From assembly GCA_002269645.1 (NCBI GenBank), contig NIVC01000133.1:51030-115029 (forward strand): DNA of 64,000 nt, read 5' to 3'. The notes beneath the pieces were generated by a model. It had not been told where the DNA came from. It did no database searches and saw nothing but the letters and a program-made list of their open reading frames with translations. This document shows positions 4,771 to 55,844 of this stretch, piece by piece; position 1 is the stretch's first letter; each line of letters starts with the position of its first letter. This DNA comes from Macrostomum lignano (lineage: Eukaryota). A program made the translations under genes and the position numbers.

Positions 4771-4966
4771 GTCAGTGCTGCTTAGTTTTTGTTGACCTTC
4801 TTTATGCAATCCTTGTACAAGCGGTTAAGAATGCTCGCAGATCATTCAGAATTGATCTGCTGTTGTCGCACTTCTCTATACAAGTTTTTCTCTTTTGTCT
4901 CGCCTAATCTGTTTGGGTTGGACCTTAAAATTTCATGCCCCACACTTTCAACCTCGGCTTCTAACC

Positions 4967-5425
4967 CTCCAAGATTCTCAGTTGCTGGGCCCCCACCGCC
5001 ACCCTCCAAGATTCTCAGTTGCTGGGCCCCCACCGCTACCCTCCAAGATTCTCAGTTGCTGGGCCCCCACCGCCACCCTCCAAGATTCTCAGTTGCTGGG
5101 CCCCCACCGCCACCCTCTCAGATCCTCAGTTGCTGGGCCCCCACCGCCACCCTCTCAGATCCTCAGTTGCTGGGCCCCCACCGCCACCCTCTCAGATCCT
5201 CAGTTGCTGGGCCCCCACCGCCACCCTCTCAGATCCTCAGTTGCTGGGCCCCCACCGCTACCCTCCCAGATCCTCAGTTGCTGGTCCCCCACCGCTACCC
5301 TCCCAGATCCTCAGTTGCTGGGCCCCCACCGCCACCCTCTCAGATCCTCAGTTGCTGGGCCCCCACCGCTACCCTCCCAGATCCTCAGTTGCTGGGCCCC
5401 CACCGCTACCCTCCCAGATCCTCAG
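4967..5425. repeat. 37-bp minisatellite (CAGATCCTCAGTTGCTGGGCCCCCACCGCCACCCTCT), ~12 copies, PAS gene intron 2
   Basis: Unit read directly; 37-bp period. Confidence 0.95.
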
Positions 5426-5497
5426 ACCCACGCCGCCAGCCCCAGCCCCTGGCACTGCAATGAATCCCCTAAAGCAGTGGATCGCGCACCCCCGCAG

Positions 5498-5696
5498 GCT
5501 GTCTGGAGCCAGCCCTAGTTTTCGTCTGTCGCCCGGCCGCGGCCCCGCAGCCTGAGCCCGTGCGGCGGCCGCCCAGCCTGCCAGCCCAGTTGCCAGTCGC
5601 AGGATTTTCTCTGCAGCCGCAGCAGAAACGGCCAACTCCCACTCTGGTTTGCGAGCTCAACTTGCCAGATTTAACTGTGCTGCGATCTGCTTGCAG
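5498..5696 (+). CDS. PAS-PAS-LxxLL protein, exon 3 (end of PAS-A, start of PAS-B)
   Basis: Acceptor CCCGCAG, phase 1; CLEPALVFVCRP resembles the last PAS-A strand; donor GTCTGT at 5697, phase 2. Confidence 0.7.
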
Positions 5697-6848: not shown

Positions 6849-7005
6849 TCATCAACAAAGACCCTAGGAAAAAGTCAAAACCATTAATTACTTTTGATTG
6901 AACCTACAGAAATAAGTTTTGTAGATAGAATGGAATTGACACTTGAAGCTGTAATCGATGTGATGCTAGGATTAACATGGACTCCCGCTGTTAACCACGC
7001 CACAG

Positions 7006-7121
7006 TCCTGAGCTAACGGCCAGCCTAGGCATCCTTGGCGAATACTTCCTCGGCAAACAATGGGGCCAACTGGTGGCGCAGTCCGACCGGCCCATCTGGC
7101 AAAGGCATTTGGACACGGCTG
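7006..7121 (+). CDS. PAS-PAS-LxxLL protein, exon 4 (PAS-B)
   Basis: Acceptor CCACAG, donor GTAAGG; phase 2/1; SPELTASLGILGEYFLGKQWGQLVAQSD matches the PAS-B core. Confidence 0.8.
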
Positions 7122-7129
7122 GTAAGGAC

Positions 7130-7520
7130 TCCTCACCTACCTGACTGTCTCCTCACTCATCTGTCTCTTTCCTCGCTCACATGCCTCTGCTCACTCACCT
7201 GTCTCCTTGCTCACTCACCTGTCTCTTTCCTCACTCGTCTCCTTGCTCACTCACCTGTCTCCTTGCTCACTCACCTGTCTGTCTCCTCACTCATCTGTCT
7301 CTTTCCTCGCTCACATGCCTCTGCTCACTCACCTGTCTCTTTCCTCACTCGTCTCCTTGCTTACTCACCTGTCTCTTTCCTCACTCACTTGTCTCCTTGC
7401 TCACCTGTCTCCTTGCTCACTCACCTGTCTCTTTCCTCACTCACCTCTCTTTCCTCACTCCCATGTCTCTTTAATCTTTGCACACCTATCTATTTTTCGC
7501 TCACCTGTCTCCTTATTAAT
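7130..7520. repeat. CT-rich low-complexity tandem repeat (CTCACTCACCTGTCT), PAS gene intron 4
   Basis: Direct. Confidence 0.9.
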
Positions 7521-7605
7521 GTTCACTCTATGCCAATCCATCAACTTCTTTCCCATGCCCACTCCATCACTGCGCAACTCTAAACTGCGCCCATTTAATT
7601 CGCAG

Positions 7606-8580: not shown

Positions 8581-8804
8581 CTGCCGCTTAAAATTGGAGG
8601 CCACTGTTAATGGTGGCCATTTGATTTCCTAGTTTTGCTCCGATTTTACAGTGTTGTAATCTAATACGAGTATGATCTCGTGCTCTGTAGTACCTGTGCT
8701 GCCGATAATGAGATTTAGCAACTGCTTCTGAATTGGTTGGGATTTCGATGTACACTAGGATCTAGATCTTCAGTGTGCGCCACATCTTCAGGCTAAACAG
8801 CTGC

Positions 8805-9200
8805 CACCCTGCCAGATCCTCAGTTTCTTGGCCACTGCCACCCTCCCAGATCCTCAGTTTTTTGGACACCGCCACGCTCCCAGATCTTCAGTTGCTGGGC
8901 CACCGCCACGCTCCCAGATCTTCAGTTGCTGGGCCACTGCCACGCTCCCAGATCCTCAGTTGCTGGGCCACTGCCACCCTCCCAGATCCTCAGTTGCTGG
9001 GCCACTGCCACCCTCCCAGATCCTCAGTTGCTGGGCCACTGCCACCCTCCCAGATCCTCAGTTGCTGGGCCACTGCCACCCTCCCAGATCCTCAGTTGCT
9101 GGGCCACTGCCACCCTCCCAGATCCTCAGTTGCTGGGCCACTGCCACCCTCCCAGATCCTCAGTTGCTGGGCCACTGCCACCCTCCCAGATCCTCAGTCG
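8805..9200. repeat. 34-bp minisatellite (CCCAGATCCTCAGTTGCTGGGCCACTGCCACCCT), related to the 37-bp array
   Basis: Direct; 34-bp period. Confidence 0.95.
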
Positions 9201-10494
9201 CGTGTCCACTGCCACCGTCTCCTAAATCATCAGACTCAGATTACAAATCTAGATGTGTACTCTTAATTGTATCTATTCAAAAATCAATTAGGCATTAGTA
9301 GTTCTCCCTTCGCTTCCATGTTTTCCTTGTTATTTACGAGGTATTCACTAATGTCGGTCGAAATTCTCTTTACTTTCACACCTATCTCTTCTGTCTCATT
9401 CATCTTTCGATATTGCCGGAGCGGATGGCAGCACTAGAAAGAAAATGTAAATAGGGCATCGGCGGTCCCTGTCCACTCTGTCAGTTAAATTTGTCTTTGT
9501 GGATTTGCTTTTTTCAATTTTGATTTGTTTGCTTTTCATACCATTACCAGGCTTAATGGTTTAACTGGCTCCCTCTGGCGCCTGCGGGCAGTTATAACCA
9601 ATTATTTAATGGCTTATGTTCACCGCTGTCTTTGTTGCCTAGCCTAGGATTGGTAACATTTTAGCTTGTTTGCATATCTTCAATACGAGCATCTCTAGAC
9701 ATGTCCAAAGTTGACGCCGAATCTTCAAGATTCATTTTTTATACGTGTTTGCTTCATAAAGACGGCTCGCCACGTGGCGAGAATTTATCGCAGTGACCCC
9801 TTCCCCAGTTCAGTTTGAAAAATGTCCCGCCTGCACTACTCGCCGCAAGTAGAACTCTCTTTTGCTCACGCATGTCTCAGCATGACCTTGTCACCCAGTG
9901 CTCCTCTAGATAAAGGTTTATACCGTTTATGATGATGCTAAGCCATTGTATCTGTTGTTATTTTCTATACCCTCCCAATCGCCAATGACTGCTTAGCTTT
10001 GTCTAATTCATTACCTCAGGTGACCCCCGCGCCCCGGCTTATATTTGTTTAGATGCGACACTTGTCAAACAACTGACCAAGGGTGACTTGGTTCTTTCTC
10101 TACGCATCCGGGTGGTCTTGGGTCCCTGCGTGTTTAACCAACCAACCGCAAGCAACCAAGCTTTAATTATCTACTAATATTATAACATGTGCTCTCCTTT
10201 GTCTGTTAGCGCGTGAGCTAGTGGTTTTTTCACAATAAAAACAATATAATATGAACTATACATAATAATTACACTACTACTGCTCTCTTTCTGCCTATAT
10301 GAATGGCTCAGTCTGATGCGGCTCTCGGCGTTAAAAAATCATTATTAGAGAATATGCCTTTATTATTTCATTGATAATAATTTTTATTTATGCTACTTAA
10401 GTTTGAATTAACTTGACAGTGCTTCAAATGCAACATAGGCAGGCCAAGATCGAAAGGTCTTTCAAAACAATTGTTAAAGCTTTTTAGATTGTTA

Positions 10495-10969
10495 TTAAGT
10501 CTGACGCTTTTGCAAGCCGCCCTCGTCAATCTGCTTGTCCAGGTATTCATCAATAGCGGTGCTGAACTGCGGTCGCGTCGGTTTGCCTTTGTACTTTTTG
10601 CGCAGCCTCTGCTGCATGCCAACCTCCATAGCGTACCGGTCCGGCATCTTTGGCCGTTGAATGTCCAACAGAGGCGGCTCGATCAAAAGCTCCTGTGCGT
10701 GCGGCAGGCTGGTACCCGAGGCGTAGTCGCCGAACGGGTCAGCTGGCAGGGGCCGGCCGCCGCTGTACAGGCTGTAGTCGTAGAAGCGAAACGGCACAGG
10801 CGCTTCCAAGTAGCTGGAGTCGAATGCCTTCTCAACCTCGAGTTGCAGCTTATCGTATTGGTGCTTGCACACTTGCACCTTGCCTACGCCCAGCAGCAGG
10901 CCCGACTGCGGGTCCAGGAACTGCACTAGCAGGTCACTGTGGCGATAGTCCAGCACGAGGTACTCGTCT
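10495..10969 (-). CDS. MRPS18B: Mitochondrial ribosomal protein S18B (mS40), exon 2
   Basis: Acceptor AATTCAG, phase 2, joins CPLC-R-DEYLVLDYRHSDLLVQFLDPQSG...VCKHQ (S18 motif); RLRKKYKG matches the RLRRLYQG region of human MRPS18B as I recall it; stop at 10495. Confidence 0.92.
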
Positions 10970-11007
10970 CTGAATTGGGCAGGGTGGGCGGCCTTAATTG
11001 GAGGCCC

Positions 11008-12013
11008 AACTGGCTGGGCGATTCTAAAGGAGGATGAACTGGCTGGGCGATTCTTAAGGAGGATGAACTGGCTGGGCGATTCCTAATGAGGATAAACTGG
11101 CTGGGCGATTCCTAATGAGGATGAACTGGCTGGGCGATTCTTAAGGAGGATGAACTGGCTGGGCGATTCTTAATGAGGATGAACTGGCTGGGCGATTCCT
11201 AATGAGGATGAACTGGCTGGGCGATTCTTAATGAGGATGAACTGGCTGGGCGATTCCTAATGAGGATGAACTGGCTGGGCGATTCCTAATGAGGATGAAC
11301 TGGCTGGGCGATTCCTAATGAGGATAAACTGGCTGGGCGATTCTTAATGAGGATGAACTGGCTGGGCGATTCCTAATGAGGATGAACTGGCTGGGCGATT
11401 CCTAATGAGGATAAACTGGCTGGGCGATTCTTAATGAGGATGAACTGGCTGGGCGATTCCTAATGAGGATGAACTGGCTGGGCGATTCCTAATGAGGATG
11501 AACTGGCTGGGCGATTATTAATGAGGATGAACTGGCTGGGCGATTCTTAATGAGGATGAACTGGCTGGGCGATTCCTAATGAGGATGAACTGGCTGGGCG
11601 ATTCCTAATGAGGATGAACTGGCTGGGCGATTCTTAATGAGGATGAACTGGCTGGGCGATTCCTAATGAGGATGAACTGGCTGGGCGATTCCTAATGAGG
11701 ATAAACTGGCTGGGCGATTCTTAATGAGGATGAACTGGCTGGGCGATTCCTAATGAGGATGAACTGGCTGGGCGATTCCTAATGAGGATGAACTGGCTGG
11801 GCGATTATTAATGAGGATGAACTGGCTGGGCGATTCTTAATGAGGATAAACTGGCTGGGCGATTCTTAATGAGGATGAACTGGCTGGGCGATTCTTAATG
11901 AGGATGAACTGGCTGGGCGATTATTAATGAGGATGAACTGGCTGGGCGATTATTAATGAGGATGAACTGGCTGGGCGATTATTAATGAGGATGAACTGGC
12001 TGGGCGATTCTTA
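11008..12013. repeat. 29-bp minisatellite (AACTGGCTGGGCGATTCCTAATGAGGATG), ~35 copies, filling most of the MRPS18B intron
   Basis: Direct; 29-bp period. Confidence 0.95.
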
Positions 12014-12074
12014 AGGATTATTTTGGAATGGCAGCCAGCCAGCCGCCTGCACCATCACCGCAGCACTGACTGAC

Positions 12075-12445
12075 CTGCACAGGGGACAGGGATTGGCCCG
12101 GATGTAGACGCCCTCGGTATTGAAACAGCGCTGCCGCGGCTTAGACGCTTCAAAGGAGCCGCGCAGATTGCGCCTATAGTGGAACCAGACCGGCCGTTCG
12201 CCGTAGACCTCCTTGTAGGCTGCGCTAGCCATGTAGCGCAGGCTCTCGTCCAGCGTTCTCGGCGTGTACTGCGCGTACTTTACTGGTGGATTGCGCGAGC
12301 CGAGACGCTTGTTCCTGCCTGTGCCGACGCCTTCACCGTCGCCTGATGGCTGCGTGCACAGGGCCTGGGCCAGGCGGAGCCGGGGCAGCGGCAGAGCCAA
12401 GGTGGGCTGCTGCGCCGCTGGTAAAATTCGTCTGAGTGCCGACCA
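12075..12445 (-). CDS. MRPS18B: Mitochondrial ribosomal protein S18B, exon 1 (start Met not in this exon)
   Basis: YMASAAYKEVYGERPVWFHYRRNLRG...NPCPLCR matches MRPS18B; donor GTCAGT at 12074; candidate acceptor TTGCAG just before 12445; in-frame TAA at 12466-12464 and no ATG between. Confidence 0.88.
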
Positions 12446-12900
12446 CTGCAAGCAGTGATTTGCTTAAGTTTATTTTGAATTTTTTGATCCCAGGCCACAC
12501 AGATTAACTAATTAGCTACATAGTACTGTTGGCACACAATGATTATAAACTATAATACAATAATAAGATACTGTGTATATTAAAATATATTACATTATAT
12601 GCTTTTCCTAATTAAAGAAAATATCAGGAAAATATTGGAGTTAGCAGAACAGTCATAGGAAATTCCATGAAAATTCTGTGGCTAGTTCAGCTACAGTAGA
12701 GATAAACCAATAAGGCGTGTTCTAATCTTAACAGTTAAAGTTGTTAATCTATCAATATTTATGCTAGTTTAAGGTCATATTTTTCTTTATTTCTTATTTT
12801 ATATACTTTTAAGACTAGAAACATTGTTATATGCTTTTGATCTTTTTATTGTTTTTTTTACTGATTTCACTAAGAATATAGTTCATCCATCCTCTAGAAC

Positions 12901-15900
12901 CAGCGTGCCCAACGCTGCGCGGAAAATCCCAAACTGCCGCGCTGCGCGGAAATTTTTTGCCGCTGACAAAAGATACAATACTATATGGCCTTTAATTATC
13001 CAATTTCAGAAGCAGCAAATAACTAATCTGAAAGAAAGCAGCACTCTGCACTAGCAGCATAACATCTACTCACCGTATTCCTGAGGTCGAGGTCGAGGAC
13101 CAATCACGCTGCACTACTTGGAAGGAATCCTACGCCAGCATCCAAGATGCCAATGGAGATTCTTTTGGTCTTTGGTGCAAGGCACTACCTACACCTGGCT
13201 CTGTGGAGTGCACTGTGTGTGACAAAACTATCTCTATCAAATCTGGAGGCATTATAAGGCTCAAAGAACATTTGACAACGCAATTGCACCGGTCCAAAGT
13301 GGGTTCCATTCGGAACTGTAAAAAGTTAAATTTCTGTTTTTCCGCTACGAAAAGTTCCGACAAGGCGTCAAAGAAGACCACTGATGCCGAAATTCAGTTG
13401 GCAATCATGTTTGCAGAGCATGATTTGCCTTTTCGTTTAGCTGATTCCATGCCGAAGACACTAAAAAAGATGCTTCTAGACTGCAAAACCACTGAGGAGC
13501 TCTCCATTGCGAAACAAAAGATGACGTATCTCCTCAATTTCGGAGTGAGCGCTCATTTCTAGAAAGAAGTATTGAAAGAACTTAACGACAATCATTGCTA
13601 TTCATTGCTTCTAGACGAAGGAAGCATTGGTGATCGGAAGTGGTTGGCAGCCATGATCCGTCATCTAGCAGATGGACGTGTCATCACCGATTTCCTTTTC
13701 CTGCGCTCTACTGCAAGATCAGGTGCCTCAGCCGAGGCTCTGAAAGACATTGTTTTGGAGAGCTCGGCAATCGAAACTTGCAACCTAGTCACTGCTTGAC
13801 GGTAATGTCGGACAGCGCCTCTGTAATGCGTGGCAACATTGGCAGTCTTGTTGAGCGTCTGAAAGATGCGGCACCAAACTTGGTCGATGTTGGAGGCTGC
13901 ATACTGCACGATGTGCATAACTCTGCACAGCGTGCAGTAGTTCAGTTAGGAGAAGATGTTGAGGAGCTTCTGGATGACACGTACAACTATCGACGCTATG
14001 CCAAGGCTGCCGATAATTTCCGTTGGACGCAAGAAATGCTCCAGAAATCACCATTGCGAATTCTTAGACGTGTGGAGACAAGATGGCTGCATTCTTGTGT
14101 GAATCGCCACATTCAACTGAACGACTCATTAAAAGTATTTTTTCGTCGTCTTCCTGAAGTCGAGAAAAAGAACCCTAAGGTCCAGCGAATTCTACAGCGC
14201 CTGGAAGCGCCTGAAATATTGGCGTACCTAGGATTTGTTAGCTCAGCTTTGACTCCACTGTAGCGTTTTGAGAAGCTCTTTCAGGCGTCAGAACCACTCA
14301 TTTTTGATGTCTTCAGTGAAATCTCTGCTCTAATGGCGTCTGTGGCAAGCTGTTTTCTTCGGAAGTAGTGTATAGAAGCTGCAGTCTGCAGAACAGCTGC
14401 AGGATTTAGCTAACGCGGAGCGTTCGCAGCAGCTACCTGATCGAGAGCTCATCATCGGCGAAGTCGCTCGCAAAGTTCTGACATCCGAGACAGTGACGAA
14501 CTTCCAGCGTTGGTTATTTTACAACCGAGTACGCCTGTTCTACTCGACACTGTTGGCAGCATTGTTCCACTACTTGCCGCTTAAGCTGAGAATTATTCAA
14601 GCTGCAGCCTTTGCCAACCCGTTTTTAACCGAGGCTGCTACTATTTTGACTTACTTTGACTTAGCTGCAGGGCTGTCCCGGAGGGGACACAGCGGGAAGG
14701 CGCGGGCGCCCATTCCGCTAGTCCCTGAACGGCCGACGCGTCGCTATGGACGGAGGGTTGGCGCCGCCCAGGGAGGTCCCCCAGTGTCGCCAGCAGCTAT
14801 AGTGCTCTCTGGAAAAGAGAGTTCAGCCCTGCGGGTGGCCCGAAGGTAGCGCATGAGCTGATTAAAGTTATCGGGTTTGCACGCTTCAGTAATAGATGTG
14901 TGTGGCCCGAGGTAAGTGAGTCTGGCCCGCGTGAAGGCGGGACAGATGCTGACGAAATGCTCAGCGGTTTCGTCACCTGAGTTGCAGAAACTACAGGTGG
15001 CGTTGGTGGCGTTGCCCTGCAGGTACTGGTGCCTGGAGAAGCAGCCGTGACCAGAGAGGGTCATGGTGGCAGCCCGGATGTCTCTGCGCGAGAGGCGCAA
15101 GAGGAGCTTCCGGAGCTGGTGGGAGGGCTGAGGGACAGCGCCTCTGGATTGCCTGCAGGTAGTGCAGTTCGCCCAAGTCGAGCGGTGCTGGGTCCTGATC
15201 CACGCTTTGATGCGCGAGTCGATGACACAGCCAGGAATCGGGACAAGGGGTTCGGGACCGAGAGAGGAGCCGGAGGCACCAACTTTTGCAAGGGTGTCAG
15301 CCAACTCATTACTGAACAGCAGCTGTGTTACATGGCGCGCCGGCTGCATGTACTCGACACGCAGGATGCTGAGTGGCGGCGATTCGGCTGCAGAAGCAGC
15401 TGCCAGTCACTGAGCAACTGAAGGACGAGCCTCGACGCGTCGAGCTGCTGTGGGACAAAGTGCAGGCTTCAGGTGATTATCCGATTCTGGCAGAATTCGC
15501 TCGAAAAACACTGATCCTGCCTCATGGAAATGCCGACATTGAGCGTCAGTTTAGCAAACTGAGTCGAATTTGCGAAAGGACCGCAACCGGCTGCAGGATC
15601 CATTGCTTAACGGCATAATGACCGTTCAAACCTTCTGCGCTGCTTGCAGCATTACCAGCAAGTCGATTGTAATAAAGGAAGCCGTGAATGCGTGAATGTG
15701 TGATTGTGTGAATGTGCCCGGCAGTCGAGCGTTGCGTACAAGAGGTATTTAAAGGTGCACGAGCAATAGGAGAAGGAGGCAGAAGCAGCAGCTGCTGCTG
15801 CAGTTGCTGAAAAGGAAAAGGCTGCTCAAGTCGAGAGAGCCCGAAATAAAGCGGAGGCTGACAAGGCAAAGGCGCGGGAGCTTGCTACGAAGCGAAAGCT

Positions 15901-21835: not shown

Positions 21836-22973
21836 CAGGGGCGTCACCATGGATTTTATGGTGGTGGGGGGGGGCAAAGCCAAGAATTCTACATGTGTAC
21901 ATGTACATGATTAAATTCCTAATTGTACATTACTTTCAGAATCGGTGTTTTTAGCCCTCGTTTTAGCGTCGCAGGCACTCATTTTGGCGTCGCAGGCCCT
22001 ACATTTTGTCACCCTGAAGCAAAATTATTGATTTCCATAACAGGTCACAAGGTGGGGTGGGGCGACAAAGCATTGGCATGTCCCCCCATAGCTTTTACTA
22101 TGGGGCGATGTCCCCCCATAGCTTTTACTATGGGGCGATGTCCCCCCATAGCTTTTACTATGGGGCGATGTCCCCCCAATGCTTTTACTATGGGGCGATG
22201 TCCCCCCATAGCTTTTACTATGGGGCGATGTCCCCCCCCCCAGGTAGCGACGCCCCTGGTTTTGCTTCAGGGCGCCAAAATGAGCGCCTGTCTGCGGCGC
22301 CAAAATGAGCGCCTGTCTGCGGCGCCAAAATGAGCGCCTGCCTGCGGCGCCAAAATGAGCGCCTGGCTGCGGCGCCAAAATGAGCGCCTGCCTGCGGCGC
22401 CAAAATGAGTGCCTGTCTGCGGCGCCAAAATGAGCGCCTGCCTGCGGCGCTAAAATGAGCGCCTGCCTGCGGCGCCAAAATGAGTGCCTGAATGCGGCGC
22501 CAAAATGAGCGCCTGCCTGCGGCGCTAAAATGAGCGCCTGCCTGCGGCGCCAAAATGAGTGCCTGTCTGCGGCGCCAAAATGAGCGCCTGCCTGCGGCGC
22601 TAAAATGAGCGCCTGCCTGCGGCGCCAAAATGAGTGCCTGAATGCGGCGCCAAAATGAGTGCCTGAATGCGGCGCCAAAATGAGTGCCTGAATGCGGCGC
22701 CAAAATGAGCGCCTGCCTATGGCGCTAAAATGAGCGCCTGCCTGCGGCGCCAAAATGAGTGCCTGCCTGCGGCGCCAAAATGAGTGCCTGCCTGCGGCGC
22801 TAAAATGAGCGCCTGCCTGCGGCGCCAAAATGAGTGCCTGCCTGCGGCGCCAAAATGAGTGCCTGCCTGCGGCGCTAAAATGAGCGCCTGCCTGCGGCGC
22901 CAAAATGAGTTCTAACAGCACCGATTCTCAAAAAAATGTTACATGTAGGAATTTAGTCATGGCGACGCCTCTG
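21836..22973. mobile_element. Non-autonomous foldback/MITE-like element containing 30-bp and 25-bp tandem arrays
   Basis: Ends CAGGGGCGTCACCATG / CATGGCGACGCCTCTG (14/16 inverted); inner arms inverted; 5x30-bp at 22081-22230 and ~26x25-bp at 22265-22915; no TSD found. Confidence 0.65.
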
Positions 22974-23957: not shown

Positions 23958-24985
23958 TCTAGCTGTGTTGTCAATGAGTCTAGTCCAGCTATGTTGTCAA
24001 TGAGTCTAGCTGTGTTGTCAATGAGTCTAGCTGTGTTGTCAATGAGTCCAGCTGTGTTGTCAATGAGTCTAGTCCAGCTATGTTGTCAATGAGTTGTCAA
24101 TGAGTCTTGTGTTGTCAATGAGTCTAGCTGTGTTGTCAATTAGTCAAGCTGTGTTGTCAATGAGTCCAGCTGTGTTGTCAATGAGTCTAGCTGTGTTGTC
24201 AATGAGTCCAGCTGTGTTGTCAATGAGTCTAGCTGTGTTGTCAATGAGTCCAGCTGTGTTGTCAATGAGTCCAGCTGTGTTGTCAATGAGTCTAGCTGTG
24301 TTGTCAATGAGTCCAGCTGTGTTGTCAATGAGTCTAGCTGTGTTGTCAATGAGTCCAGCTGTGTTGTCAATGAGTCTAGTCCAGCTATGTTGTCAATGAG
24401 TTGTCAATGAGTCTTGTGTTGTCAATGAGTCTAGCTGTGTTGTCAATTAGTCAAGCTGTGTTGTCAATGAGTCCAGCTGTGTTGTCAATGAGTCTAGCTG
24501 TGTTGTCAATGAGTCTAGCTGTGTTGTCAATGAGTCTAGCTGTGTTGTCAATGAGTCTAGCTGTGTTGTCAATGAGTCCAGCTGTGTTGTCAATGAGTCT
24601 AGCTGTGTTGTCAATGAGTCTAGCTGTGTTGTCAATGAGTCTAGCTGTGTTGTCAATAAGTCTAGCTGTGTTGTCAATGAGTCTAGCTGTGTTGTCAATC
24701 GGTTTAGCTGTGTTGTCAATCAGTTTAGCTGTGTTGTCAATGAGTCTAGCTGTGTTGTCAATGAGTCTAGCTGTGTTGTCAATGAGTATAGCTGTGTTGT
24801 CAATGAGTCTAGCTGTGTTGTCAATGAGTCTAGCTGTGTTGTCAATGAGTATAGCTGTGTTGTCAATGAGTATAGCTGTGTTGTCAATGAGTCTAGCTGT
24901 GTTGTCAAATGAGTCTAGCTGTGTTATTAATGGGTCTTGCTGTGTTGTCAAATGAGTCTAGCTGTGTTATTGTTGGGTCTAGCTA
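23958..24985. repeat. 21-bp minisatellite (GTGTTGTCAATGAGTCTAGCT)
   Basis: Direct; 21-bp period. Confidence 0.95.
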
Positions 24986-29461: not shown

Positions 29462-29592
29462 CTGCAAATTCAGGTGTTTTCTTTTCTACAGACTGCGGAC
29501 TTTTCAAAAGAATGATAAAAATGAAAATGGATTCGAGCCCAGGACCTCTGCTACCTTTCGTCTGTCAGGAATTCTTCCGGCATGTCACTCAC

Positions 29593-30541
29593 CTGATCGT
29601 AATTGAACCTGCTGACCAGCTGCATCAGCCGGGCCACTTCAACGCGGGCCTCCAGCTTGAAGGCGCCGGCAAAGCCCGGCCCGTTCAGCAGCGTCGCTTG
29701 CGCCGAGGCCAGGCGTCCGGCCTGCTCGGCCAGTTCGGCCAGCAACGGTCGAGTTGGACGAGTTGCCGTCAAAAGCTGCCGCTGTTGCAGAGCCGACGAC
29801 GAGGTCAACTGAGCGGTTGAAAGCGCGCCAGTGGGCGTGGGCGGCGGCGCCGAGGAGGCGCTGAAGGCCAGGGCGGCCCGCTCGCAGACGGCAAGGACGA
29901 GGAGGAGGCAGAGTGCGGCGGTCAGGCCGCAGAGCAGCGCCAGGCAGTGGCCCGACTGCGAGCAGGCGACCCGGCGGGAGCAGCCGGAGGAGCCGTCCGA
30001 TGAAGTAGCCGACGCTGACGCGGACGCGGAGCCGGACTGGTCGAGCCGACGGCGCCGGTCTCCTGGCCGCTGCTGGAGCTGCTGCTGCTGCTGTTGGTCA
30101 AAGCGGCGACCTGGCGACTGCGGCTGGAGCGGGCGCAGGTCCGACTTGGCCGGGTCGTCGGCCGGTTGTCGGCCGCTGCACAGCCGCCTGACGGTGCGCA
30201 CGGTGTGGTAGAGGCGGTACAGCAGCACCAGCAGGTCCAGCAGCAGCAGGAACAGCCTCAGCTGCAGCAGGCTGAAGCCGACGCCGCCGCCGCCGCCGCT
30301 GCCACTGCCGCGCAGGAATCTGTCATCAACGCCTCCGGCATCTTCACCAGACCCGATGCTGCCGCTGCCAGCCTCGTTCCGGTAGGCGGAGTCGTCGTTA
30401 GAGCAGAAGTAGCGGTGCGAGTCTCCCACGGTGGCCGTGGACCCGGTGGAGGGCAGCTCTGGGGAGGCAGCAGCTGCGGCGGCGGCGGCGGCTGGCGGGT
30501 AAAACGCGGGATCGCTGAACTGCGGCAGCATCTGGCCGAAC
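29593..30541 (-). CDS. Large 5-TM membrane protein, exon 9 (TM3, TM4)
   Basis: TTTCACCAG acceptor, phase 2; GTGAGT donor, phase 0; hydrophobic LRLFLLLLDLLVLLY and CLALLCGLTAALCLLLVLAVC. Confidence 0.85.
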
Positions 30542-31056
30542 CTGGTGAAAGCGGTGGAATGGCTCTCATTTTACTTTGGCCGTTCAATTGCTCCTCTAGA
30601 GGAGTCGGACTGCCATAAATAATAATGCCACTTCAGCCTGTGAGGGCGTCCGGTCAATGACCAGTTGGCAGCCCCGGCTTCCTGACCCGGGAATTGCCGC
30701 CGTCGCCATTCTGGACAGGCGACAATTCCAACATCGCTCGATGCCTCAAAAGGCTTTCGCCTGCTGCCGCTATCCTCGTGCGGTGGAGGGAGATGAGAGG
30801 GAGAAGGAAGCCCGGCTCAGGTTTCGGCTGAAGCAGCCTCTCGCCTCGGAGCCCGGAGGTGAAAAGCGGAGACAGGAAAACAGGGCGGGGAGGAGAAAAA
30901 CTCTCCGGGGAAATTTCCCACCTGACCAGCCTCCAAATAAGATATCCCCATTCTACTTCCTGACTTTCCTCTTCCCCAAGAAATCTGTCGGATCTCAAGT
31001 CATGCACGCGAATTCCCCCCCCCCTTGGCAGGGCCCAGTGCTCAGGCCGGACCAAC

Positions 31057-32314
31057 CTCTTCCACAGAACAGTTGGCATGAGATGCAACTCCTCGGCGTT
31101 CGTGTCTTCAAGGAAGCTCATAAAGTCCACTTCTCGTTTTCTCAGGTGAGACTTTCTCTGGTAGAAGTCGTAGAGAGACTCGGTGAGGAAGTGGGTCCGG
31201 TTGTAAATGCTCAGCGGGAAGCTCATCCACTTGTTGCCGTATACCTCCTTCAGGTACTTGGCGTAGGGCGAGTATTTCAACTCCAGCCGGTCGCTCAGCT
31301 CCTGCAGTTGGACGTCCAGAAAGCCGCTCAGCCGGTTGGCGAACTTGCGGTGCTCGGCAACGAATCGCTCGCCGAGCAGGCGGCCAACCGATCGGTCACC
31401 GTCAAACGCCAGCCGAGCTTGAGCGTCCGCCGACCTGCCGAAGGCGGCGCCGAGGTCGGCGAGGTTGGCCGCCAGTACGCGGTCGCAGGCGTGCCGCATC
31501 TCCTGCAGGTGCTGCAGCTGGCCGGCCTGCACGGCGCCGCTCAGAGTCTCAAGGTGCTCCAGCTCCGAGCTGAACGACGCGTAGCTGACTTCGTCGCCGC
31601 CGCTGCCGCCGCCTCTGCCGCCTCGTTCGAGCCGGGCGAACTCGGCCGGCCGCATGGCCATAAGGAGGGCAGCCCCGGCCGAGAAGGTGAACAGCAGGCA
31701 GTAGCAGACGCGAACCGTCAGGTAGACAGCAACAATGAGTCGGCGGCGCCACTGGCTGCAGGTGGCAACAGGCGCCGGAGTTGACAATTGCTGATGTCGC
31801 TGAACGCTGTCGCGGCCGCTTCTGCTCCGACCAGAACGACACGAGCGGACCAGCAGGAAGGTGACCAGCAGGAACAGGTACAGCAGGCCCAGCAGTACGC
31901 ACAGCACCAGTGGCACCATGCCGCCGGCGCCAAAGAGAACGCGCCGGCGCCCGCTGCCGCCCCAATTGGCCTCCTCTGAAGCTGCCGCCGCCGCCGCCGC
32001 TGCCGGCGATCCGCCTCCGCCACCGCCGAACGCCGACCCGGCTGAGTCGGTCAGGCGCACCTGGCTCAGGTAAATTCTTGACCTTCCAGCGCAGTCGTCT
32101 AAATCGGCTTCAAGATCCGCGTCGCCCGGTAGGTCGCGGCCGCCGGAGCCGCCGTGGTCGCTGCCCGAGGTCGCATCCGGGCCAAGCAGGGGCAGGGTGA
32201 GCACAGCGCTGAAGCTCAGCTGGCGGATCAGCCACTCCTGAACTAGCAGAAGCCGCCGCCTGCCGATGTCCTTCAGCTGCAGTCGAACGTAGGCAGGTGT
32301 CGAGGTCACTGAGC
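31057..32314 (-). CDS. Large 5-TM membrane protein, exon 8 (TM1, TM2, long helical loop)
   Basis: TTCCCGCAG acceptor, phase 1; donor GTTGGT at 31056, phase 2 (weaker site); MVPLVLCVLLGLLYLFLLVTFLLV and LIVAVYLTVRVCYCLLFTFSAGAALLMAM. Confidence 0.85.
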
Positions 32315-38592: not shown

Positions 38593-40435
38593 GTGCTTCC
38601 ATAGAGATCTGCCCGCCCCAAGTAGTCTTACAGGAACTGATCCCGGCAGCCAAAATGCTAGTGAGCTCTCTCTCAGCTCTCAATTATTGCCACCGGGGGT
38701 GTAAAGGAAATCGGGTTGCAACCCTGAGTCACGCAATTCCCACCAGCCTAAGGTGGGTCAAAGAGGCTCAGTTTATTAAGTCACAGCTCACCTGTAATGT
38801 TAATTGTCCACAGACCATCGCCAGAGTAGGTCAGAGTGCCAGCGGAACTTGCCAATCTAGGCGATGGAGCGTCTCTGCAGAAGTAGTGCCTCAGCAGCGA
38901 CTGTCCCTCTGTAGGTGTTGTAAAATTGAGTACGCCTTATAGCTTAGCTTGCAATGAAAATTCAAAGCGCCTAGAGATTAGGGACTGATAAACTGTCTGC
39001 TGCGACTGCGCCTGGATAGGACAGCGGATTGATATAGATGGAGCAGTATTGGAGAGGCTGGGCTGGGCAGACCAATGAGCTTGCAGCTAGAGGTGTCAGC
39101 CAGTTGAGACTGACGGCTCTGTCTTTCCCATACAGTCTCCAGGTTTTCTGGGGTCCCGTTGATTAGCATTCCGGGTATTTGCACCTGCCATCACCAAGTT
39201 GAAACTTTCCAGAAGCATTGAGCTGATTCGAGAACCGAAGAGAGAGCCAATCTGAGTGCTTTCGAGTGGCGAAAATATACCAGCAATGTTTGACAAAAGA
39301 GAAGCCAAATACGCTCGTAAAGATGATCGCAAAAGAAAAAAAGTGAATTACAGAATGAAGGGAAAAAGCTTTCTCTTCTGAGCAAAAAAGCAAAATGCCT
39401 ACATGCAGGACCCGCTAGCAGACTGCGCAGAGCCGGCTGACTTACTCGCTAATGAGAGTCGACAGCGGGGGGTCTAAAGAACGACCGGAGAGCCGTGTAG
39501 TGAGAAACTGATGGAGAGAGGCGGAGGCTGCGGCGGTGCAGGCAATGCTTGAAGGAAAACAGACAGATGACTGCCAGACCTGAGGCTGACGCGGGGCGCA
39601 ATTTCGCATTCAGAAATGAGGAGAAAAGCTGACAGGGAAAGTGGAGTCCGTGATTTTGAGCCGAAAGCCGGGCGACTCCCCGCTGCGCCTTGCCTGACCG
39701 ACCTCTCTGCAGCTTTTAAATTGGCCTCGCGAGGCCTCTCACGACTCGCGCGCACCTTCTGATTACTTGGGCTAATCCGCCCCGCAGGTTTGTTTCCATC
39801 GACAGGGGGGGGGGGAGAAACGGCTAAACTTGTCGTCAGGCAAACTTCAGGACGAAGCCGCGCGGTGCGAGCTGCTCCCTCGAGGCTGGCTGGGGGCGCC
39901 CCGTCCAGCTTCTGAATGATGAAGCGCCGGGGAAGGCGGAGCCGCTCCGTAGAGGAGGGAGAGAGGCTGAGAACGGCTTTAGGCGCGCGGCTTCCTTAAT
40001 GACTTGTGGCGGCTTTGTACGGACAGACACAGGGGGGGGGGGGCGGAGAGACGGCCGGTCGCCGGTTCACCGCCTGCAAATGATTGACCCACTTGACATA
40101 TTTTGGATTCAAAGAATCAAGCGGGCTGCGCGCTAGTGGTGAGAGACTGAGTGGCTGCCGGGATTGAGTCCAGTCCGCAAGAGTTGCAGACTGACTGGCT
40201 TGTGGCGGGCGCCGCTTCCGCCTCCATCGCTCTGTTTCCCCTCTCCCAGCCTGCTATTGAACTGCTCTATCGATCGAACATCAATGCATTGGCGTCACTT
40301 TATGTTAAAGCAATTTGCCAAATTGGAGTTCTATTGCGCGCTGTAAGGAAACTCATCGATTAGTATAAGGATGACGCAACGCTAAATTTAGAAGCTTAAA
40401 CAGCTTAAACAGATTTTATGAAACTCTTACAGAGA

Positions 40436-40905
40436 AGGATCAGAGAAGGATCAGGGAAGGATCAGGGAAGGATCAGGGAAGGATCAGGGAAGGATCAGGG
40501 AAGGATCAGGGAAGGATCAGGGAAGGATCAGGGAAGGATCAGGGAAGGATCAGGGAAGGATCAGGGAAGGATCAGGGAAGGATCAGGGAAGGATCAGGGA
40601 AGGATCAGGGAAGGATCAGGGAAGGATCAGGGAAGGATCAGGGAAGGATCAGGGAAGGATCAGGGAAGGATCAGGGAAGGATCAGGGAAGGATCAGGGAA
40701 GGATCAGGGAAGGATCAGGGAAGGATCAGGGAAGGATCAGGGAAGGATCAGGGAAGGATCAGGGAAGGATCAGGGAAGGATCAGGGAAGGATCAGGGAAG
40801 GATCAGAGAAGGATTAGGGAAGGATTAGGGAAGGATCAGGGTAGGATCAGGGAAGGATCAGGGAAGGATCAGGGAAGGATCAGGGACGGATCAGGGAATG
40901 TTCAG
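40436..40905. repeat. 11-bp tandem repeat (GGATCAGGGAA), ~40 copies
   Basis: Direct. Confidence 0.97.
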
Positions 40906-41480: not shown

Positions 41481-44003
41481 TCTATGACCAGCTAGTGTTT
41501 ATGGCCTGTTAGTGTCTATGACCAGCTAGTGTTTATAGCCTGTTAGTGTCTATGGCCAGCTAGTGTTTATGGCCTGTTAGTGTCTATGACCAGCTAGTGT
41601 TTATGGCCTGTTAGTGTCTATGGCCAGCTAGTGTTTACGGTATGGAAGTGTCTATGGCCAGCTAGTGTTTATGGTCTGCAAGTGTCTATGGCCAGCTAGT
41701 GTTTTTGGTATGGAAGTGTCTATGGCCAGCTAGTGTTTATGGCCTGTTAGTGTTTATGGCCAGCTAGTGTTTATGGTCTGTTTAGTGTCTATGGCCAGCT
41801 AGTGTTTATGGCCTGTTAGTGTCTATGGCCAGCTAGTGTTTATGGTCTGCAAGTGTCTATGGCCAGCTAGGTGTTTATGGTCTGCAAGTGTCTATGGCCA
41901 GCTAGTGTTTTTGGTATGGAAGTGTCTATGGCCAGCCAGGGACAACTAAAACCCTCGGGACGCGAAACGAGCCAATTCATGGCAAAAAATCTGAGGGGCT
42001 CGCTTAAAAGTATTGTTCTATGGCTTTTTCAAGTCTTCTCTGCTATCAGGCATTAACGGTTAGATTAAATAGTAAAGCGAGGAAATGTCGAGTATTTAAT
42101 TTAAAGAATAGGAACCAGTGATATAATTACAATGTATTTACAATAAAGTAACCGCCATATCAACAAAAAAACTCCAACGGCAAGAAGAGGATAAAGGATG
42201 AAAGCGAAGATGAAACTCCAACGGCAAGAAGATAAAGGATGAAAGCGAAGATGAAACTCCAACGGCAAGGAGATAGAAGCAAATACGGAACTCCAAGGAC
42301 AAGACGACACAAACAGTCAGTAGCTCGTACATAAAGGAACCTGGTCCGGATCGTCGACGGCTCGACCCAGAAGGTGACGGCATCGATATCGAACGGACGG
42401 TTGTATGTACATTTCGTCAAACATAATTACGCAGTTTCGCTGAGCTCCTGATAGACTAGCAAAAACTGACTGGATCACATCGGCTGCGTCGGTTTCTGTG
42501 CCAACTTCTCCTGTACCTGCTAGTTGCAGCTGCAGCGTTCGGGGATGAGGCAATGGCAATAGCTTCCGTAGGTAAGAGTAAGCCGAACTACTGATCAAGT
42601 AGAGCAATGCTGACTGTCGCACTAGTGAAATGTCATAGCGGCGATTGTTCCGATTTACTAATGTAAGGCTAAGTTGTCGAATCAAAAACTGAAGCGACGG
42701 ATCCAAATCAGAGTCAGAATCTATATCATCACTGATTCTACTAACAAACGCTTCGACTTCACGTTGGGGATTGGCGTCGGAATTTTTGCACCGCACGACA
42801 ACAGCATCCAGTTGCGACCAGCGCTTGAGTGTCGGTTGAAATCCCAACAAGTCTCGAACCGAAATCGGTGTATGCAGTTTGAACAGACAGGTCTCCATCT
42901 TTATCTAACGTAAACAAGTAAACGTCTTCGTTCAGAATAGCTGTGTTCAGTGCATGTCGAGATACGACATCCGAATTTTTCACCTCAGCTCGAAAACTTT
43001 CCCATGCCGGCAAAAAATCAAGCAGCTGAAAAGCGTCCATCTCATCGATGTCGCCGCACCTCGCGTCAGAAAGAACACCGCGCTTTTCGGCCTGTCGGTC
43101 CTGGTCTAAAATAAGAGTAAAAATAAAAGTAAGATAATTGTAAGCGGCAAAATCGATATAGACGCTAAGTGTTGAGCAATCTTTAAGTTACGTACCTTGG
43201 TTCTGAACAAAACACGAGCTAGGAACTCCATTAAAAACAGAAGGAGGATTAATTGGCCTTTCGGTAGAGTTTTTCTTGACCATTGGAGCATCGCTTGGCC
43301 AATGCTTTACGCACACGCCCATATTGTCAGTCACTCTCTAAAATAATAAATTTTGGGTTTCAAGTTGTTTGGACGAGACTGGCATGCAGAATTGAAGCGG
43401 AATTATGCAGCAGTAATGACAGCAAATGATCTGGTTTCTTACCTGGAGAATATTTGGCAGCGCCTTTCTCCATCGCTCTCGCTCCTGTGAATCTCTGGGA
43501 AACGCAAATGTCCGTGTTCGAACGGCTTCAGAGTTGTAATTTGACGAGCACGGAAATACGCTGCACTTTCTTGGCATTTCATCAAGTGAATAAAAAATGC
43601 TTCTCTTGATTTAGTTCAGCTTAGCTTCACTGCTGGCCGCAACTAAAGCAATTTTAATTTGCTTGATAGCAGAGAAGACTTGAAAAAGCCATAGAACAAT
43701 ACTTTTAAGCGAGCCCCTCAGATTTTTTGCCATGAATTGGCTCGTTTCGCGTCCCGAGGGTTTTAGTTGTCCCTGTGGCCAGCTAGTGTTTATGGTCTGT
43801 TAGTGTTTATGGCCAGCTAGTGTTTATGGTCTGTTAGTGTCTATGGCCAGCTAGTGCTTATGGCCTGTTAGTGTCTATGGCCAGCTAGTGTTTATGGCCT
43901 GTTAGTGTCTATGGCCAGCTAGTGTTTATGGTATGGAAGTGTCTATGGCCAGCCAGTGTTTATGGTATGGAAGTGTCTATGGCCAGCTAGTGTTTATGGT
44001 CTG
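41481..44003. repeat. ~34-bp minisatellite (TGGCCAGCTAGTGTTTATGGCCTGTTAGTGTCTA) split by a P-family element
   Basis: Units at 41481-41936 and 43776-44003. Confidence 0.9.
41937..43775 (-). mobile_element. Internally deleted P-superfamily (THAP-type) DNA transposon, 1839 bp
   Basis: Perfect 112-bp TIRs (41937-42048, 43664-43775); TSD TGGCCAGC; THAP MPRKCSVFPC...FAFP...RWRKA...VCVKHW...PPSVF; transposase AYSYLRKLLPLP...CVIMFDEMYI, truncated after GRAVDDPD. Confidence 0.95.
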
Positions 44004-51984: not shown

Positions 51985-52680
51985 GTATATTGGTGCCATT
52001 TTGTACCATGTTGGTGCCATTTTTTAACCGTATTAGTGCCATTTTGTACCAATTTGGTGCCATTTTGTACCATATTAGTGCCATTTTTTAACCATATTAG
52101 TGCCATTTTGTACCAATTTGGTGCCATTTTGTACCATATTAGTGCCATTTTGTACCATATTAGTGCCATTTTGTACCAATTTGGTGCCATTTTGTACCAA
52201 TTTGGTGACATTTTGTACCATATTAGTGCCATTTTTTAACCATATTAGTGCCATTTTGTACCAATTTGGTGCCATTTTGTACCATATTAGTGCCATTTTG
52301 TACCATATTAGTGCCATTTTGTACCATTTTGGTGCCATTTTGTACCATATTAGTGCCATTTTGTACCATATTAGTGCCATTTTGTACCATATTAGTGCCA
52401 TTTTGTACCAATTTGGTGCCATTTTGTACCATATTAGTGCCATTTTTAACCATATTAGTGCCATTTTGTACCATATTAGTGCCATTTTGTACCATACTAG
52501 TGGCATTTTGTACCAATTTGGTGCCATTTTGTACCATATTGGTGCCATTTTGTACCATTTTGGTGCCATTTTGTACCATTTTGGTGCCATTTTGTACCAA
52601 TTTGGTGCCATTTTGTACCATATTAGTGCCATTTTTTAACCATATTAGTGCCATTTTGTACCAATTTGGTGCCATTTTGA
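51985..52680. repeat. 21/22-bp minisatellite (TAGTGCCATTTTGTACCATAT)
   Basis: Direct. Confidence 0.95.
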
Positions 52681-52951
52681 ATCATAAAGAGCCACTGTCA
52701 TATTGTCAAAGTGCTCCGCATATTCTACTGCTATTATTTTGCATTTTTTCATTTCTAAACTGCTTCGTCAAACTTGGCATCGAGCTGTGCGAACAACCAG
52801 CAGCTGAGGCAATTCTGCCCAAATACTTTGCGCAGGAATTCACTCGTACACACAGCTCACGCAGGGTGTACATCAGCCCTGACTTTCTAATCGTCAGACA
52901 TGTACACACTCTGTGCCCCAAATTGATGCGGCTTGTGGAGTTCTCCCTCAC

Positions 52952-53135
52952 CTGTCTGGAGCAGGGGCTGTTCAGCCGGCGCACGTAGTACTGCTCGTCT
53001 GGCCCGTAGTCGGCCGGACAGCGGTCCGAGGTCGGGCTGAGGTTCTTCCGGTTGGCGCAGGAGATCCGCTGCACCCGGTTGAGAATATTGGACCGTCGGG
53101 TCAGCTGCAGCACGTAGTGATCCGGGATCGGCTGC
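52952..53135 (-). CDS. Large 5-TM membrane protein, exon 3
   Basis: CCCGGCAG / GTGAGG, phase 2/0; QPIPDHYVLQLTRRSNILNRVQRISCANRK...SPCSRQ. Confidence 0.8.
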
Positions 53136-55510: not shown

Positions 55511-55558
55511 TGAGCTCTCCAAGGCAATCAGGAGGCAATTAGCGCAAAGCTAGCCCAC

Positions 55559-55782: not shown

Positions 55783-55844
55783 CTGCAGTCAAGGGTGGCG
55801 GGTTCCGACATGGCTATTAATGCCGATTACTGCCCCAATGCCTA

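What the first reader, a model, noticed from the sequence alone, without database searches (positions are those of the whole stretch)
12380..12470. MRPS18B may take its start codon from the spliced leader
Seen: the MRPS18B frame hits TAA at 12466-12464 with no ATG before the internal YMAS Met. A TTGCAG acceptor precedes TGG TCG GCA in phase 0. Adding only AUG yields MWSALRRILPAAQQPTLALPLPRLRLAQALC, which is Arg/Leu/Ala-rich and acid-free like a mitochondrial presequence (282 aa in total). Known: flatworm spliced leaders end in AUG, and that AUG can initiate translation. Inference: an essential mitoribosomal gene whose initiation and import signal depend on trans-splicing. Alternative: a distant ATG-only micro-exon, e.g. 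ATG|GTAATT at 16565-16563. The two other nearby AGs are out of frame for a leader AUG.
Basis: partly seen in the sequence, partly recalled or inferred. Interest (0 to 1): 0.72.

Follow-up and report, generated by a model that had tools for sequence, protein, structure and literature searches.

The report
Flatworm mitoribosomal gene borrowing spliced-leader AUG
The Macrostomum lignano gene for mitochondrial ribosomal protein mS40 (MRPS18B) has no start codon of its own and most likely gets its AUG from the trans-spliced leader, a mechanism already known in flatworms.

Summary
The window is Macrostomum lignano contig NIVC01000133.1. On the minus strand, mS40/MRPS18B has two exons (12445-12075 and 10969-10495). 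There is an in-frame TAA at 12466-12464 and a cTTGCAG|TGG acceptor at 12446/12445. No ATG occurs in any frame for 213 nt, up to Met73.

- The M. lignano spliced leader ends in ATG, and its trans-acceptor motif is [T/C]TNCAG.
- All five public protein models lack an initiator Met. The three RNA-seq-guided models start 0, 3 and 6 nt after this AG.
- Divergence among the three homeologous copies drops from 5.4 % to 0.3-0.5 % exactly at the acceptor, and GC rises from 28 % to 66 %.
- Met73 is a conserved internal residue of the mS40 core.
- With the leader Met, the N-terminal length is typical of mS40 proteins, and the first 36 residues are acid-free and Arg/Leu/Ala-rich.

No leader-joined read could be reached, so neither trans-splicing nor translation is shown. 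The Schistosoma mansoni ortholog uses its own genomic ATG.

This is a new instance of a known mechanism (Cheng et al. 2006). In-frame leader AUGs are already listed for two cestode transcripts with mitochondrial-type annotations. Interest is modest.

The parts
12464..12466 (-). In-frame stop codon TAA, 7 codons upstream of the first exon codon. It closes the frame, so no genomic ATG can lie upstream in the same exon.
   Evidence: The two homeologous copies have TGA at the same codon.
12446..12451 (-). Predicted spliced-leader trans-splice acceptor TTGCAG. It matches the M. lignano trans-acceptor motif [T/C]TNCAG.
   Evidence: It is the only YTNCAG in the 555 nt upstream of the exon. It is conserved in L001 and L003.
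12075..12445 (-). Coding exon 1 of mS40/MRPS18B (codons W2 to the first two bases of R125). The donor is CAG|GTCAGT.
   Evidence: There are only 1-2 synonymous differences among the three genome copies.
12341..12445 (-). Codons 2-36. This is the acid-free, Arg/Leu/Ala-rich stretch read as a mitochondrial presequence. It has an LRRIL phi-x-x-phi-phi motif and a possible R-2 cleavage site RL|AQA after residue 26.
   Evidence: Features only; no trained predictor was available.
12230..12232 (-). First genomic ATG of the frame (Met73). It is an internal residue of the conserved ..S(I/L)RYMxSxAY.. motif, not a start codon.
   Evidence: This position is Met in 50 and Leu in 45 of 103 mS40 sequences (these include the five M. 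lignano models).
10970..12074 (-). Intron 1 (GTCAGT...TTCAG). Most of it is a 29-nt tandem repeat of 34.7 copies at 11008-12014.
10495..10969 (-). Coding exon 2, ending in TAA at 10497-10495.
10359..10388 (-). Two AATAAA poly(A)-signal candidates in the 3' UTR (10388-10383 and 10364-10359).
   Evidence: Sequence only.
12452..12960 (-). Putative outron. It is AT-rich (28 % GC in the 207 nt next to the acceptor), carries 8 ATGs, and is 5.4 % divergent among copies. Two TTTCCGCGC motifs lie at its far end (12952-12944 and 12925-12917).
   Evidence: The transcription start site is not known.

Best explanation
The M. lignano mS40/MRPS18B pre-mRNA is transcribed from a promoter some hundreds of bases upstream. 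Its AT-rich 5' part (the outron) is removed by spliced-leader trans-splicing at cTTGCAG|TGG (12446/12445). The 35-nt leader ends in AUG, so the mature mRNA reads ...UUAUUGCAUG|UGG UCG GCA.... The leader AUG is the first and only AUG for 248 nt and is in frame.

Translation from it gives a 282-aa precursor. Its first ~26-36 residues act as a mitochondrial presequence, and the conserved mS40 core starts near residue 66. The gene itself encodes no usable initiator.

Shown: the anatomy, the frame, the absence of ATG, the constraint boundary, the homology, and the leaderless transcript models. Inferred: the trans-splicing event itself, initiation at the leader AUG, and import.
For: - Organism: 100 % protein identity to M. 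lignano entries and 100 % DNA identity over 12.4 kb to Mlig_3_7 contig NIVC01000133.1.
- The leader CGGTCTCTTACTGCGAAGACTCAATTTATTGCATG ends in ATG. About 30 % of genes are trans-spliced, with acceptor motif [T/C]TNCAG (PMC8629364).
- The annotation pipeline cut transcripts at peaks of leader-trimmed reads (PMC5730564).
- The three NCBI models are 5'-partial. Their CDS starts are at +0, +3 and +6 nt from the AG. Had the transcripts run further upstream, the open frame would have been extended back to the stop at -21.
- The two UniProt models also lack Met.
- Divergence among homeologs is 38/708 (5.4 %) upstream against 1-2 of 371 nt in exon 1, all synonymous. The switch is at the acceptor.
- GC is 28 % upstream against 66 % in the first 207 nt of the exon. 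GC3 is 0.74 there and 0.77 downstream.
- The leader plus exon 1 has ATG only at nt 33 and nt 249.
- The mammalian mS40 alignment starts at query residue 66, upstream of Met73.
- In 95 Met-starting mS40 representatives the conserved Trp sits at median position 99 (IQR 81-120). Here it is at 88 with the leader Met and at 16 with Met73.
- The N-terminus has presequence-like features.
- Precedent: the leader AUG is functional in flatworms (Cheng 2006, cited in PMC9851317 and PMC3510090). Macrostomum authors call the final ATG a translation start codon (PMC10468722).
Against: - No leader-exon junction read or cDNA was seen. The MWSAL... protein is not in the 15-billion-protein collection, and the junction string is absent from JGI metagenome contigs.
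- Two of the three models start 3 and 6 nt inside the exon rather than at the AG. This is unexplained.
- The stretch before the AG is only 50 % pyrimidine.
- The context of the leader AUG (U at -3, U at +4) is weak by vertebrate rules.
- The S. mansoni ortholog has its own ATG and a genomic 5' UTR, so the arrangement is not conserved across flatworms.
- The presequence call rests on composition only.
Confidence: 0.8

Rival explanations
1. Translation starts at the genomic Met73 (12232-12230). The 213 nt after the acceptor are a 5' UTR, and the protein is a 210-aa mS40 without a presequence. The mRNA 5' end at 12445-12439 could even be a transcription start rather than a trans-splice site.
For: No ATG in any frame in the 213 nt before Met73, as expected of a uAUG-free UTR. 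The three model starts are scattered over 6 nt. The leader AUG has a weak context.
Against: Met73 lies inside the conserved core: the alignment to mammalian mS40 begins at residue 66, and the position is M or L in 95 of 103 sequences. A Met73 start puts the conserved Trp at position 16, equal to the lowest value among 95 Met-starting representatives; the two at position 20 or below are 80 and 163 aa long. The region is as constrained as the rest of the CDS, and GC3 is highest in this frame. If the mRNA is trans-spliced, the in-frame leader AUG comes first. A mitoribosomal protein would be left without a targeting sequence.
Confidence: 0.08
2. A cis-spliced upstream exon ending in ATG (or in ATG plus whole codons) joins the same acceptor. 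The reader's ATG|GTAATT at 16565-16563 is one example.
For: Phase-0 candidates exist. ATG|GTAATT is present in all three copies. Flatworm acceptors can be shared between cis- and trans-splicing (PMC12582326).
Against: There are 163 such candidates by chance in 11.5 kb, and none has a donor matching 8 or more of 9 consensus positions. The conservation of ATG|GTAATT only mirrors the ~94 % identity of the surrounding non-coding DNA. The interval 13203-15618 is a decayed hAT transposon on the other strand. None of the three RNA-seq-guided models, nor the two UniProt models, has an upstream exon, and no gene is called within 6 kb upstream.
Confidence: 0.05
3. Non-AUG initiation occurs on an mRNA that is not trans-spliced, for example at the in-frame TTG 12451-12449 just after the TAA.
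For: TTG is in frame and kept in all three copies. The UniProt models begin at this codon.
Against: The TTG is part of the acceptor motif and would be removed by splicing. Unspliced RNA carries 8 upstream ATGs in the preceding 515 nt. No transcript model extends upstream of the AG.
Confidence: 0.02
4. The gene copy is a 5'-truncated pseudogene, or the assembly is wrong at this point.
For: Lack of a start codon is a classic pseudogene sign.
Against: Three separately assembled homeologous copies share the same structure, have intact ORFs and differ only by synonymous changes in exon 1. The search found no other M. lignano mS40.
Confidence: 0.01

Closest known systems
[quoted passage not shown]
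   Same: The leader ends in AUG. The acceptor places that AUG in frame with an ORF that has no start of its own. The N-terminus matches orthologs only if the leader Met is used. That is the same argument used for Echinococcus cDNAs in PMC3510090.
   Different: This is a free-living macrostomorphan rather than a neodermatan parasite. Here it is inferred from the genome and leaderless transcript models, not from leader-bearing cDNA or a translation assay. The S. mansoni ortholog of this same gene does not use the mechanism.
Echinococcus granulosus trans-spliced transcripts listed with the SL AUG in frame and annotated as putative NADH-ubiquinone oxidoreductase and COX6B (PMC3510090, Table 2)
   Same: Both annotations are of mitochondrial proteins (my reading of the names; the paper does not comment on this), and the reading frame is headed by the leader AUG.
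   Different: They are respiratory-chain components, not a mitoribosomal protein. That table does not say whether these two lack any nearby genomic ATG.
Echinococcus granulosus thioredoxin glutathione reductase, where trans-splicing yields mitochondrial and cytosolic variants (Agorio et al. 2003, cited in PMC12582326)
   Same: Trans-splicing decides whether a mitochondrial targeting sequence is translated.
   Different: There, alternative mRNAs give two isoforms. Here a single acceptor is predicted and only one product. Dual products through leaky scanning to Met73 are speculation.
Mammalian mS40 / MRPS18B of the 28S mitoribosomal subunit (PDB 5AJ3 chain p, 3J9M chain AO)
   Same: The core is homologous over residues 66-193, including PVWxxYRRN and NPCPxCRD (E about 2e-21). 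A comparable N-terminal extension precedes the core.
   Different: The mammalian genes have their own ATG. The C-terminal tail is not alignable.

Membership tests
SL-AUG-initiated flatworm mRNA (Cheng et al. 2006 class) | The host has an SL RNA whose leader exon ends in AUG | tested here: met
   The organism was identified as M. lignano. Its published 35-nt leader ends in ATG (PMC8629364; PMC10468722). The SL gene itself is not in this window.
SL-AUG-initiated flatworm mRNA (Cheng et al. 2006 class) | [quoted passage not shown] | tested here: met
   TTGCAG at 12451-12446 fits [T/C]TNCAG. It is the only such motif in the 555 nt upstream and is conserved in three copies.
SL-AUG-initiated flatworm mRNA (Cheng et al. 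2006 class) | The leader AUG is in frame with the main ORF, with no stop in between | tested here: met
   ATG+TGG TCG... reads through to the mS40 stop and gives 282 aa.
SL-AUG-initiated flatworm mRNA (Cheng et al. 2006 class) | No genomic AUG can give the full conserved N-terminus | tested here: met
   There is a stop 7 codons upstream. The first ATG is Met73, inside the conserved core.
SL-AUG-initiated flatworm mRNA (Cheng et al. 2006 class) | A leader-exon junction observed in RNA | not testable with these tools
   No reads or cDNA were reachable. The only support is indirect: three 5'-partial transcript-based models start 0-6 nt after the AG.
SL-AUG-initiated flatworm mRNA (Cheng et al. 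2006 class) | Translation initiates at the leader AUG | not testable with these tools
   This needs Ribo-seq, a reporter or proteomics.
mS40 / MRPS18B mitoribosomal protein | Sequence homology to mS40 chains of solved mitoribosomes | tested here: met
   phmmer E = 1.9e-21 to 5AJ3_p and 2.3e-20 to 3J9M_AO over residues 66-193. 182 representatives have E <= 1e-10.
mS40 / MRPS18B mitoribosomal protein | Pfam Ribosomal_S18 domain above the gathering score | tested here: not met
   16.6 bits against a cut-off of 21, E = 0.0088. The S. mansoni ortholog does carry PF01084. I take the weak score as divergence of the mS40 branch, so the mS40 assignment rests.
mS40 / MRPS18B mitoribosomal protein | An N-terminal mitochondrial presequence | tested here: inconclusive
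   36 acid-free residues, net charge +4, amphipathic ALRRILPAAQQ (muH 0.68), an LRRIL motif and an R-2 site. TargetP and MitoFates were not available.
Downstream gene of an SL-resolved operon | A same-strand gene a short distance upstream | tested here: not met
   No gene is called within 6 kb upstream in any of the three copies. The interval holds a hAT remnant on the other strand.

The most novel reading that the evidence does not exclude
The genomic start codon of mS40 was lost in the Macrostomum lineage after the gene became trans-spliced, since the S. mansoni ortholog still has its own ATG. Synthesis and import of a core mitoribosomal protein would then depend on trans-splicing. With the weak context of the leader AUG, leaky scanning to the uAUG-free Met73 could also give a second, presequence-less isoform. 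Trans-splicing efficiency and start-site choice would then tune how much mS40 reaches mitochondria.
Probability: 0.12. Interest if true: 0.5.

Novelty: new member of a known kind. Interest (0 to 1): 0.3.

Why it matters
It explains why every public model of this conserved gene is 'partial' and lacks a Met, and it gives the corrected 282-aa precursor. It also points to a systematic annotation gap: in M. lignano, trimming the whole leader, ATG included, before ORF calling leaves SL-AUG-dependent genes 5'-partial. If the S. mansoni contrast holds, the gene is a simple case for asking how a genomic start codon becomes dispensable once a gene is trans-spliced. The mechanism itself has been known since 2006 and would not surprise a flatworm specialist.

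Tried and rejected
- Transcript evidence was looked for in several ways, all without result. The MWSAL... and Met73-start proteins are not in the 15-billion-protein collection. The supplements of PMC8629364, PMC5730564 and PMC5816591 do not list Mlig027301, Mlig007758 or MRPS18B. The gene ids occur in no held paper. The junction string is absent from JGI metagenome contigs.
- Cheng et al. 2006 and Wasik et al. 2015 are not held.
- I first concluded that the ATG|GTAATT at 16565 lay outside the block shared with the homeologs. One search showed this to be wrong. The motif is present in L001 and L003, separated by an extra ~790 bp there, so conservation neither supports nor rejects it.
- A strong donor-like GGTGAGT at 13074-13068 was considered as the end of an upstream coding exon. 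It has no in-frame ATG in phase 0.
- The operon explanation was rejected because no upstream gene is called.
- The SL RNA gene was searched for in the window and not found.

Full report
**What is there**

The window is Macrostomum lignano. The predicted protein is 100 % identical to UniRef A0A1I8I1M8. Window 18439-6000 is 100 % identical to part of contig NIVC01000133.1 of assembly GCA_002269645.1, Mlig_3_7.

The gene lies on the minus strand.
- Exon 1 is 12445-12075, with donor CAG|GTCAGT.
- Intron 1 is largely a 29-nt tandem repeat of 34.7 copies at 11008-12014.
- Exon 2 is 10969-10495, ending in TAA.

The product is mS40/MRPS18B. phmmer against PDB chains gives E = 1.9e-21 to 5AJ3 chain p and 2.3e-20 to 3J9M chain AO over residues 66-193. 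182 representatives of a 1.84-billion-protein library match at E <= 1e-10. The Pfam Ribosomal_S18 model scores below its cut-off, 16.6 against 21 bits.

**Check of the observation**

- The frame is closed by TAA at 12466-12464.
- cTTGCAG|TGG follows, with the exon starting at 12445 in phase 0.
- The first genomic ATG of the frame is the YMAS Met at 12232-12230. This is residue 73 if the leader Met is counted as residue 1.
- No ATG occurs in any frame in the 213 nt before it.
- The two neighbouring AGs would put a leader AUG out of frame.
- ATG|GTAATT is at 16565-16563.
- The spliced product with one added Met is 282 aa.
- Residues 1-36 have no Asp or Glu, 4 Arg, 8 Leu and 6 Ala. Given the D/E content of the rest of the protein this has P of about 0.009, and it is the longest acid-free run in the protein.

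The acceptor is not a chance AG. YTNCAG occurs at 0.0029 per nt in the window, and this is the only such motif in the 555 nt upstream of the exon.

**Evidence that the site is a trans-splice acceptor**

The literature supplies four relevant facts.
- M. lignano has one 35-nt spliced leader, CGGTCTCTTACTGCGAAGACTCAATTTATTGCATG.
- About 30 % of its genes are trans-spliced.
- The top motif at trans-acceptors is [T/C]TNCAG (PMC8629364).
- The Mlig_3_7 annotation cut transcripts at peaks of leader-trimmed reads and then called ORFs with TransDecoder (PMC5730564).

The genome holds three homeologous copies of the gene: the window (locus L002) plus L001 and L003. Their NCBI proteins PAA89895.1, PAA88547.1 and PAA89868.1 are all flagged partial. 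They begin WSALRR, SALRR and ALRR.

The stored coordinates are CDS extents. The CDS starts fall 0, 3 and 6 nt after the AG. A 5'-partial ORF is extended to the 5' end of its transcript. If the transcripts had continued upstream, the ORF would have run back to the stop at -21 (ANHCLQWSAL...). So all three transcript models end within a few bases of the acceptor. I cannot explain why two of them start 3 and 6 nt inside the exon. The two UniProt models start at the TTG inside the acceptor motif and also lack Met. No gene is called within 6 kb upstream in any copy, so this is not an operon-internal gene.

**Evidence that the stretch before Met73 is coding**

- The 700 nt upstream differ by 38 of 708 aligned positions (5.4 %) between the window copy and either homeolog. 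Exon 1 (371 nt) differs by one or two third-position synonymous changes. The switch is at the acceptor: the last 100 nt before it carry an indel and several substitutions.
- GC jumps from 28 % to 66 % at the same point. GC3 is 0.74 in the first 69 codons of the exon (W2-L70) and 0.77 in the rest of the CDS.
- The alignment to mammalian mS40 begins at residue 66 (LDESLRYMASAAY against KDEPWKYLDSEEY), upstream of Met73.
- Among 103 mS40 sequences with the W..YRRN motif (these include the five M. lignano models), the position of Met73 is Met in 50 and Leu in 45. It belongs to a conserved ..S(I/L)RYMxSxAY.. motif.
- Among 95 representatives that begin with Met, the conserved Trp sits at median position 99 (IQR 81-120). 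In M. lignano it is at 88 with the leader Met and would be at 16 with Met73. Position 16 equals the minimum of the set, and the two sequences at 20 or below are only 80 and 163 aa long, so they look like fragments.

**The mature mRNA**

Joining the published leader to the exon gives ATG only at nt 33 (the leader's) and at nt 249 (Met73) of leader plus exon 1. A scanning ribosome therefore meets the in-frame leader AUG first. The putative outron, by contrast, carries 8 ATGs in 515 nt.

**Alternatives**

*Cis-spliced ATG exon.* A scan of 11.5 kb upstream for ATG...|GT exons ending in phase 0 finds 163 candidates. The motif is present in L001 and L003, but so is the surrounding non-coding DNA at about 94 % identity, so this says nothing. 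I first read as showing it lay outside the shared block; one search corrected that. The region 13203-15618 on the plus strand is a decayed hAT transposon (Dimer_Tnp_hAT, E = 5.7e-7).

*Initiation at Met73, non-AUG initiation at the TTG, or a pseudogene.* These are weighed in the Rival explanations section. Together I give all the alternatives about 0.16.

**What could not be obtained**

No leader-exon junction was seen. Trans-splicing at 12445, initiation at the leader AUG and mitochondrial import therefore remain inferences.

**Comparison with what is known**

- Use of the flatworm leader's 3'-terminal AUG as initiator was established by Cheng et al. 2006. [quoted passage not shown]
- PMC3510090 extends this to Echinococcus. 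There, 143 of 187 leader-bearing clusters are full length using the leader ATG. The listed in-frame examples include transcripts annotated as NADH-ubiquinone oxidoreductase and COX6B, which I read as mitochondrial proteins.
- Macrostomum authors already call the final ATG of the leader a translation start codon (PMC10468722).
- A link between trans-splicing and mitochondrial targeting is known for E. granulosus thioredoxin glutathione reductase (Agorio et al. 2003, cited).

The present case is therefore a new member of a known kind.

One comparative point is new to me. Seven Logan RNA contigs of the S. mansoni ortholog (A0A5K4EZA8, 288 aa) carry a genomic 5' UTR...gctactgaaagcc|ATG. By my recollection of the S. 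mansoni leader, that is not its leader, but I did not check the leader sequence here. If so, that species uses its own ATG for the same gene.

**Verdict**

Novelty is low and interest is about 0.3. The practical value is a corrected gene model and a pointer to a class of 5'-partial M. lignano models that probably share this cause.

Noticed in passing
window 11008-12014 (intron 1 of the gene); L001 and L003 introns: A 29-nt tandem repeat of 34.7 copies, 96 % matches, fills most of the intron. CDS spans differ among the three homeologs (2672, 1945 and 1658 nt), so copy number apparently varies.
   Followed up: partly
window 13203-15618 (+), with 14646-15303: A decayed hAT-family transposon lies on the strand opposite to the gene; the ORF at 15373-15618 hits Dimer_Tnp_hAT with E = 5.7e-7. 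A ~660-bp segment at 14646-15303 is present in the window copy but absent from L001 and L003.
   Followed up: partly
window 12952-12944 and 12925-12917 (-): Two TTTCCGCGC motifs (E2F-site-like, from memory) lie ~470-500 nt upstream of the acceptor, where the AT-rich outron ends. L001 and L003 have an extra 8-bp TTCCGCGC copy. This may be the promoter.
   Followed up: no
window 12445-12439; L001 6001, L003 6001, L002 6001: The three NCBI 5'-partial CDS models of the homeologous copies start 0, +3 and +6 nt after the same AG. The reason is unknown. Imprecise peak calling on multi-mapping leader-trimmed reads is my guess.
   Followed up: partly
UniRef entries A0A1I8I1M8 and A0A1I8GMM3 (P0001, P0006): The source name is 'ERIC3 protein', but the sequence is clearly mS40/MRPS18B. 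This looks like a mis-transferred name.
   Followed up: yes
L004-L010 (Logan RNA contigs of Schistosoma mansoni, ERR5727xxx): The S. mansoni mS40 mRNA carries a 30-45 nt genomic-type 5' UTR before its own ATG, and no leader is visible in seven independent contigs.
   Followed up: yes
window 13074-13068 (-): A consensus-like splice donor, ACG|GTGAGT, lies ~620 nt upstream of the acceptor on the gene strand, with no in-frame ATG before it. If used, it could give a non-coding cis-spliced 5' exon competing with the leader.
   Followed up: partly
window 42317-42898 (-): This ORF has a P-element transposase-like HTH domain (Tnp_P_element, E = 6.2e-7), so it is another transposon remnant.
   Followed up: no
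window 4800-5500, 7000-7600, 8775-9266, 22025-22921, 24401-24955, 40418-40828, 52075-52988, 55110-56482, 56929-57760, 61996-62601: Many long ORFs on both strands have periodic translations, meaning short tandem repeats occupy a large part of the window.
   Followed up: no
window 29551-32309 (-): Two large GC-rich ORFs (551 and 326 aa) have only sub-threshold Pfam hits. They are probably exons of an uncharacterised membrane-protein gene.
   Followed up: no
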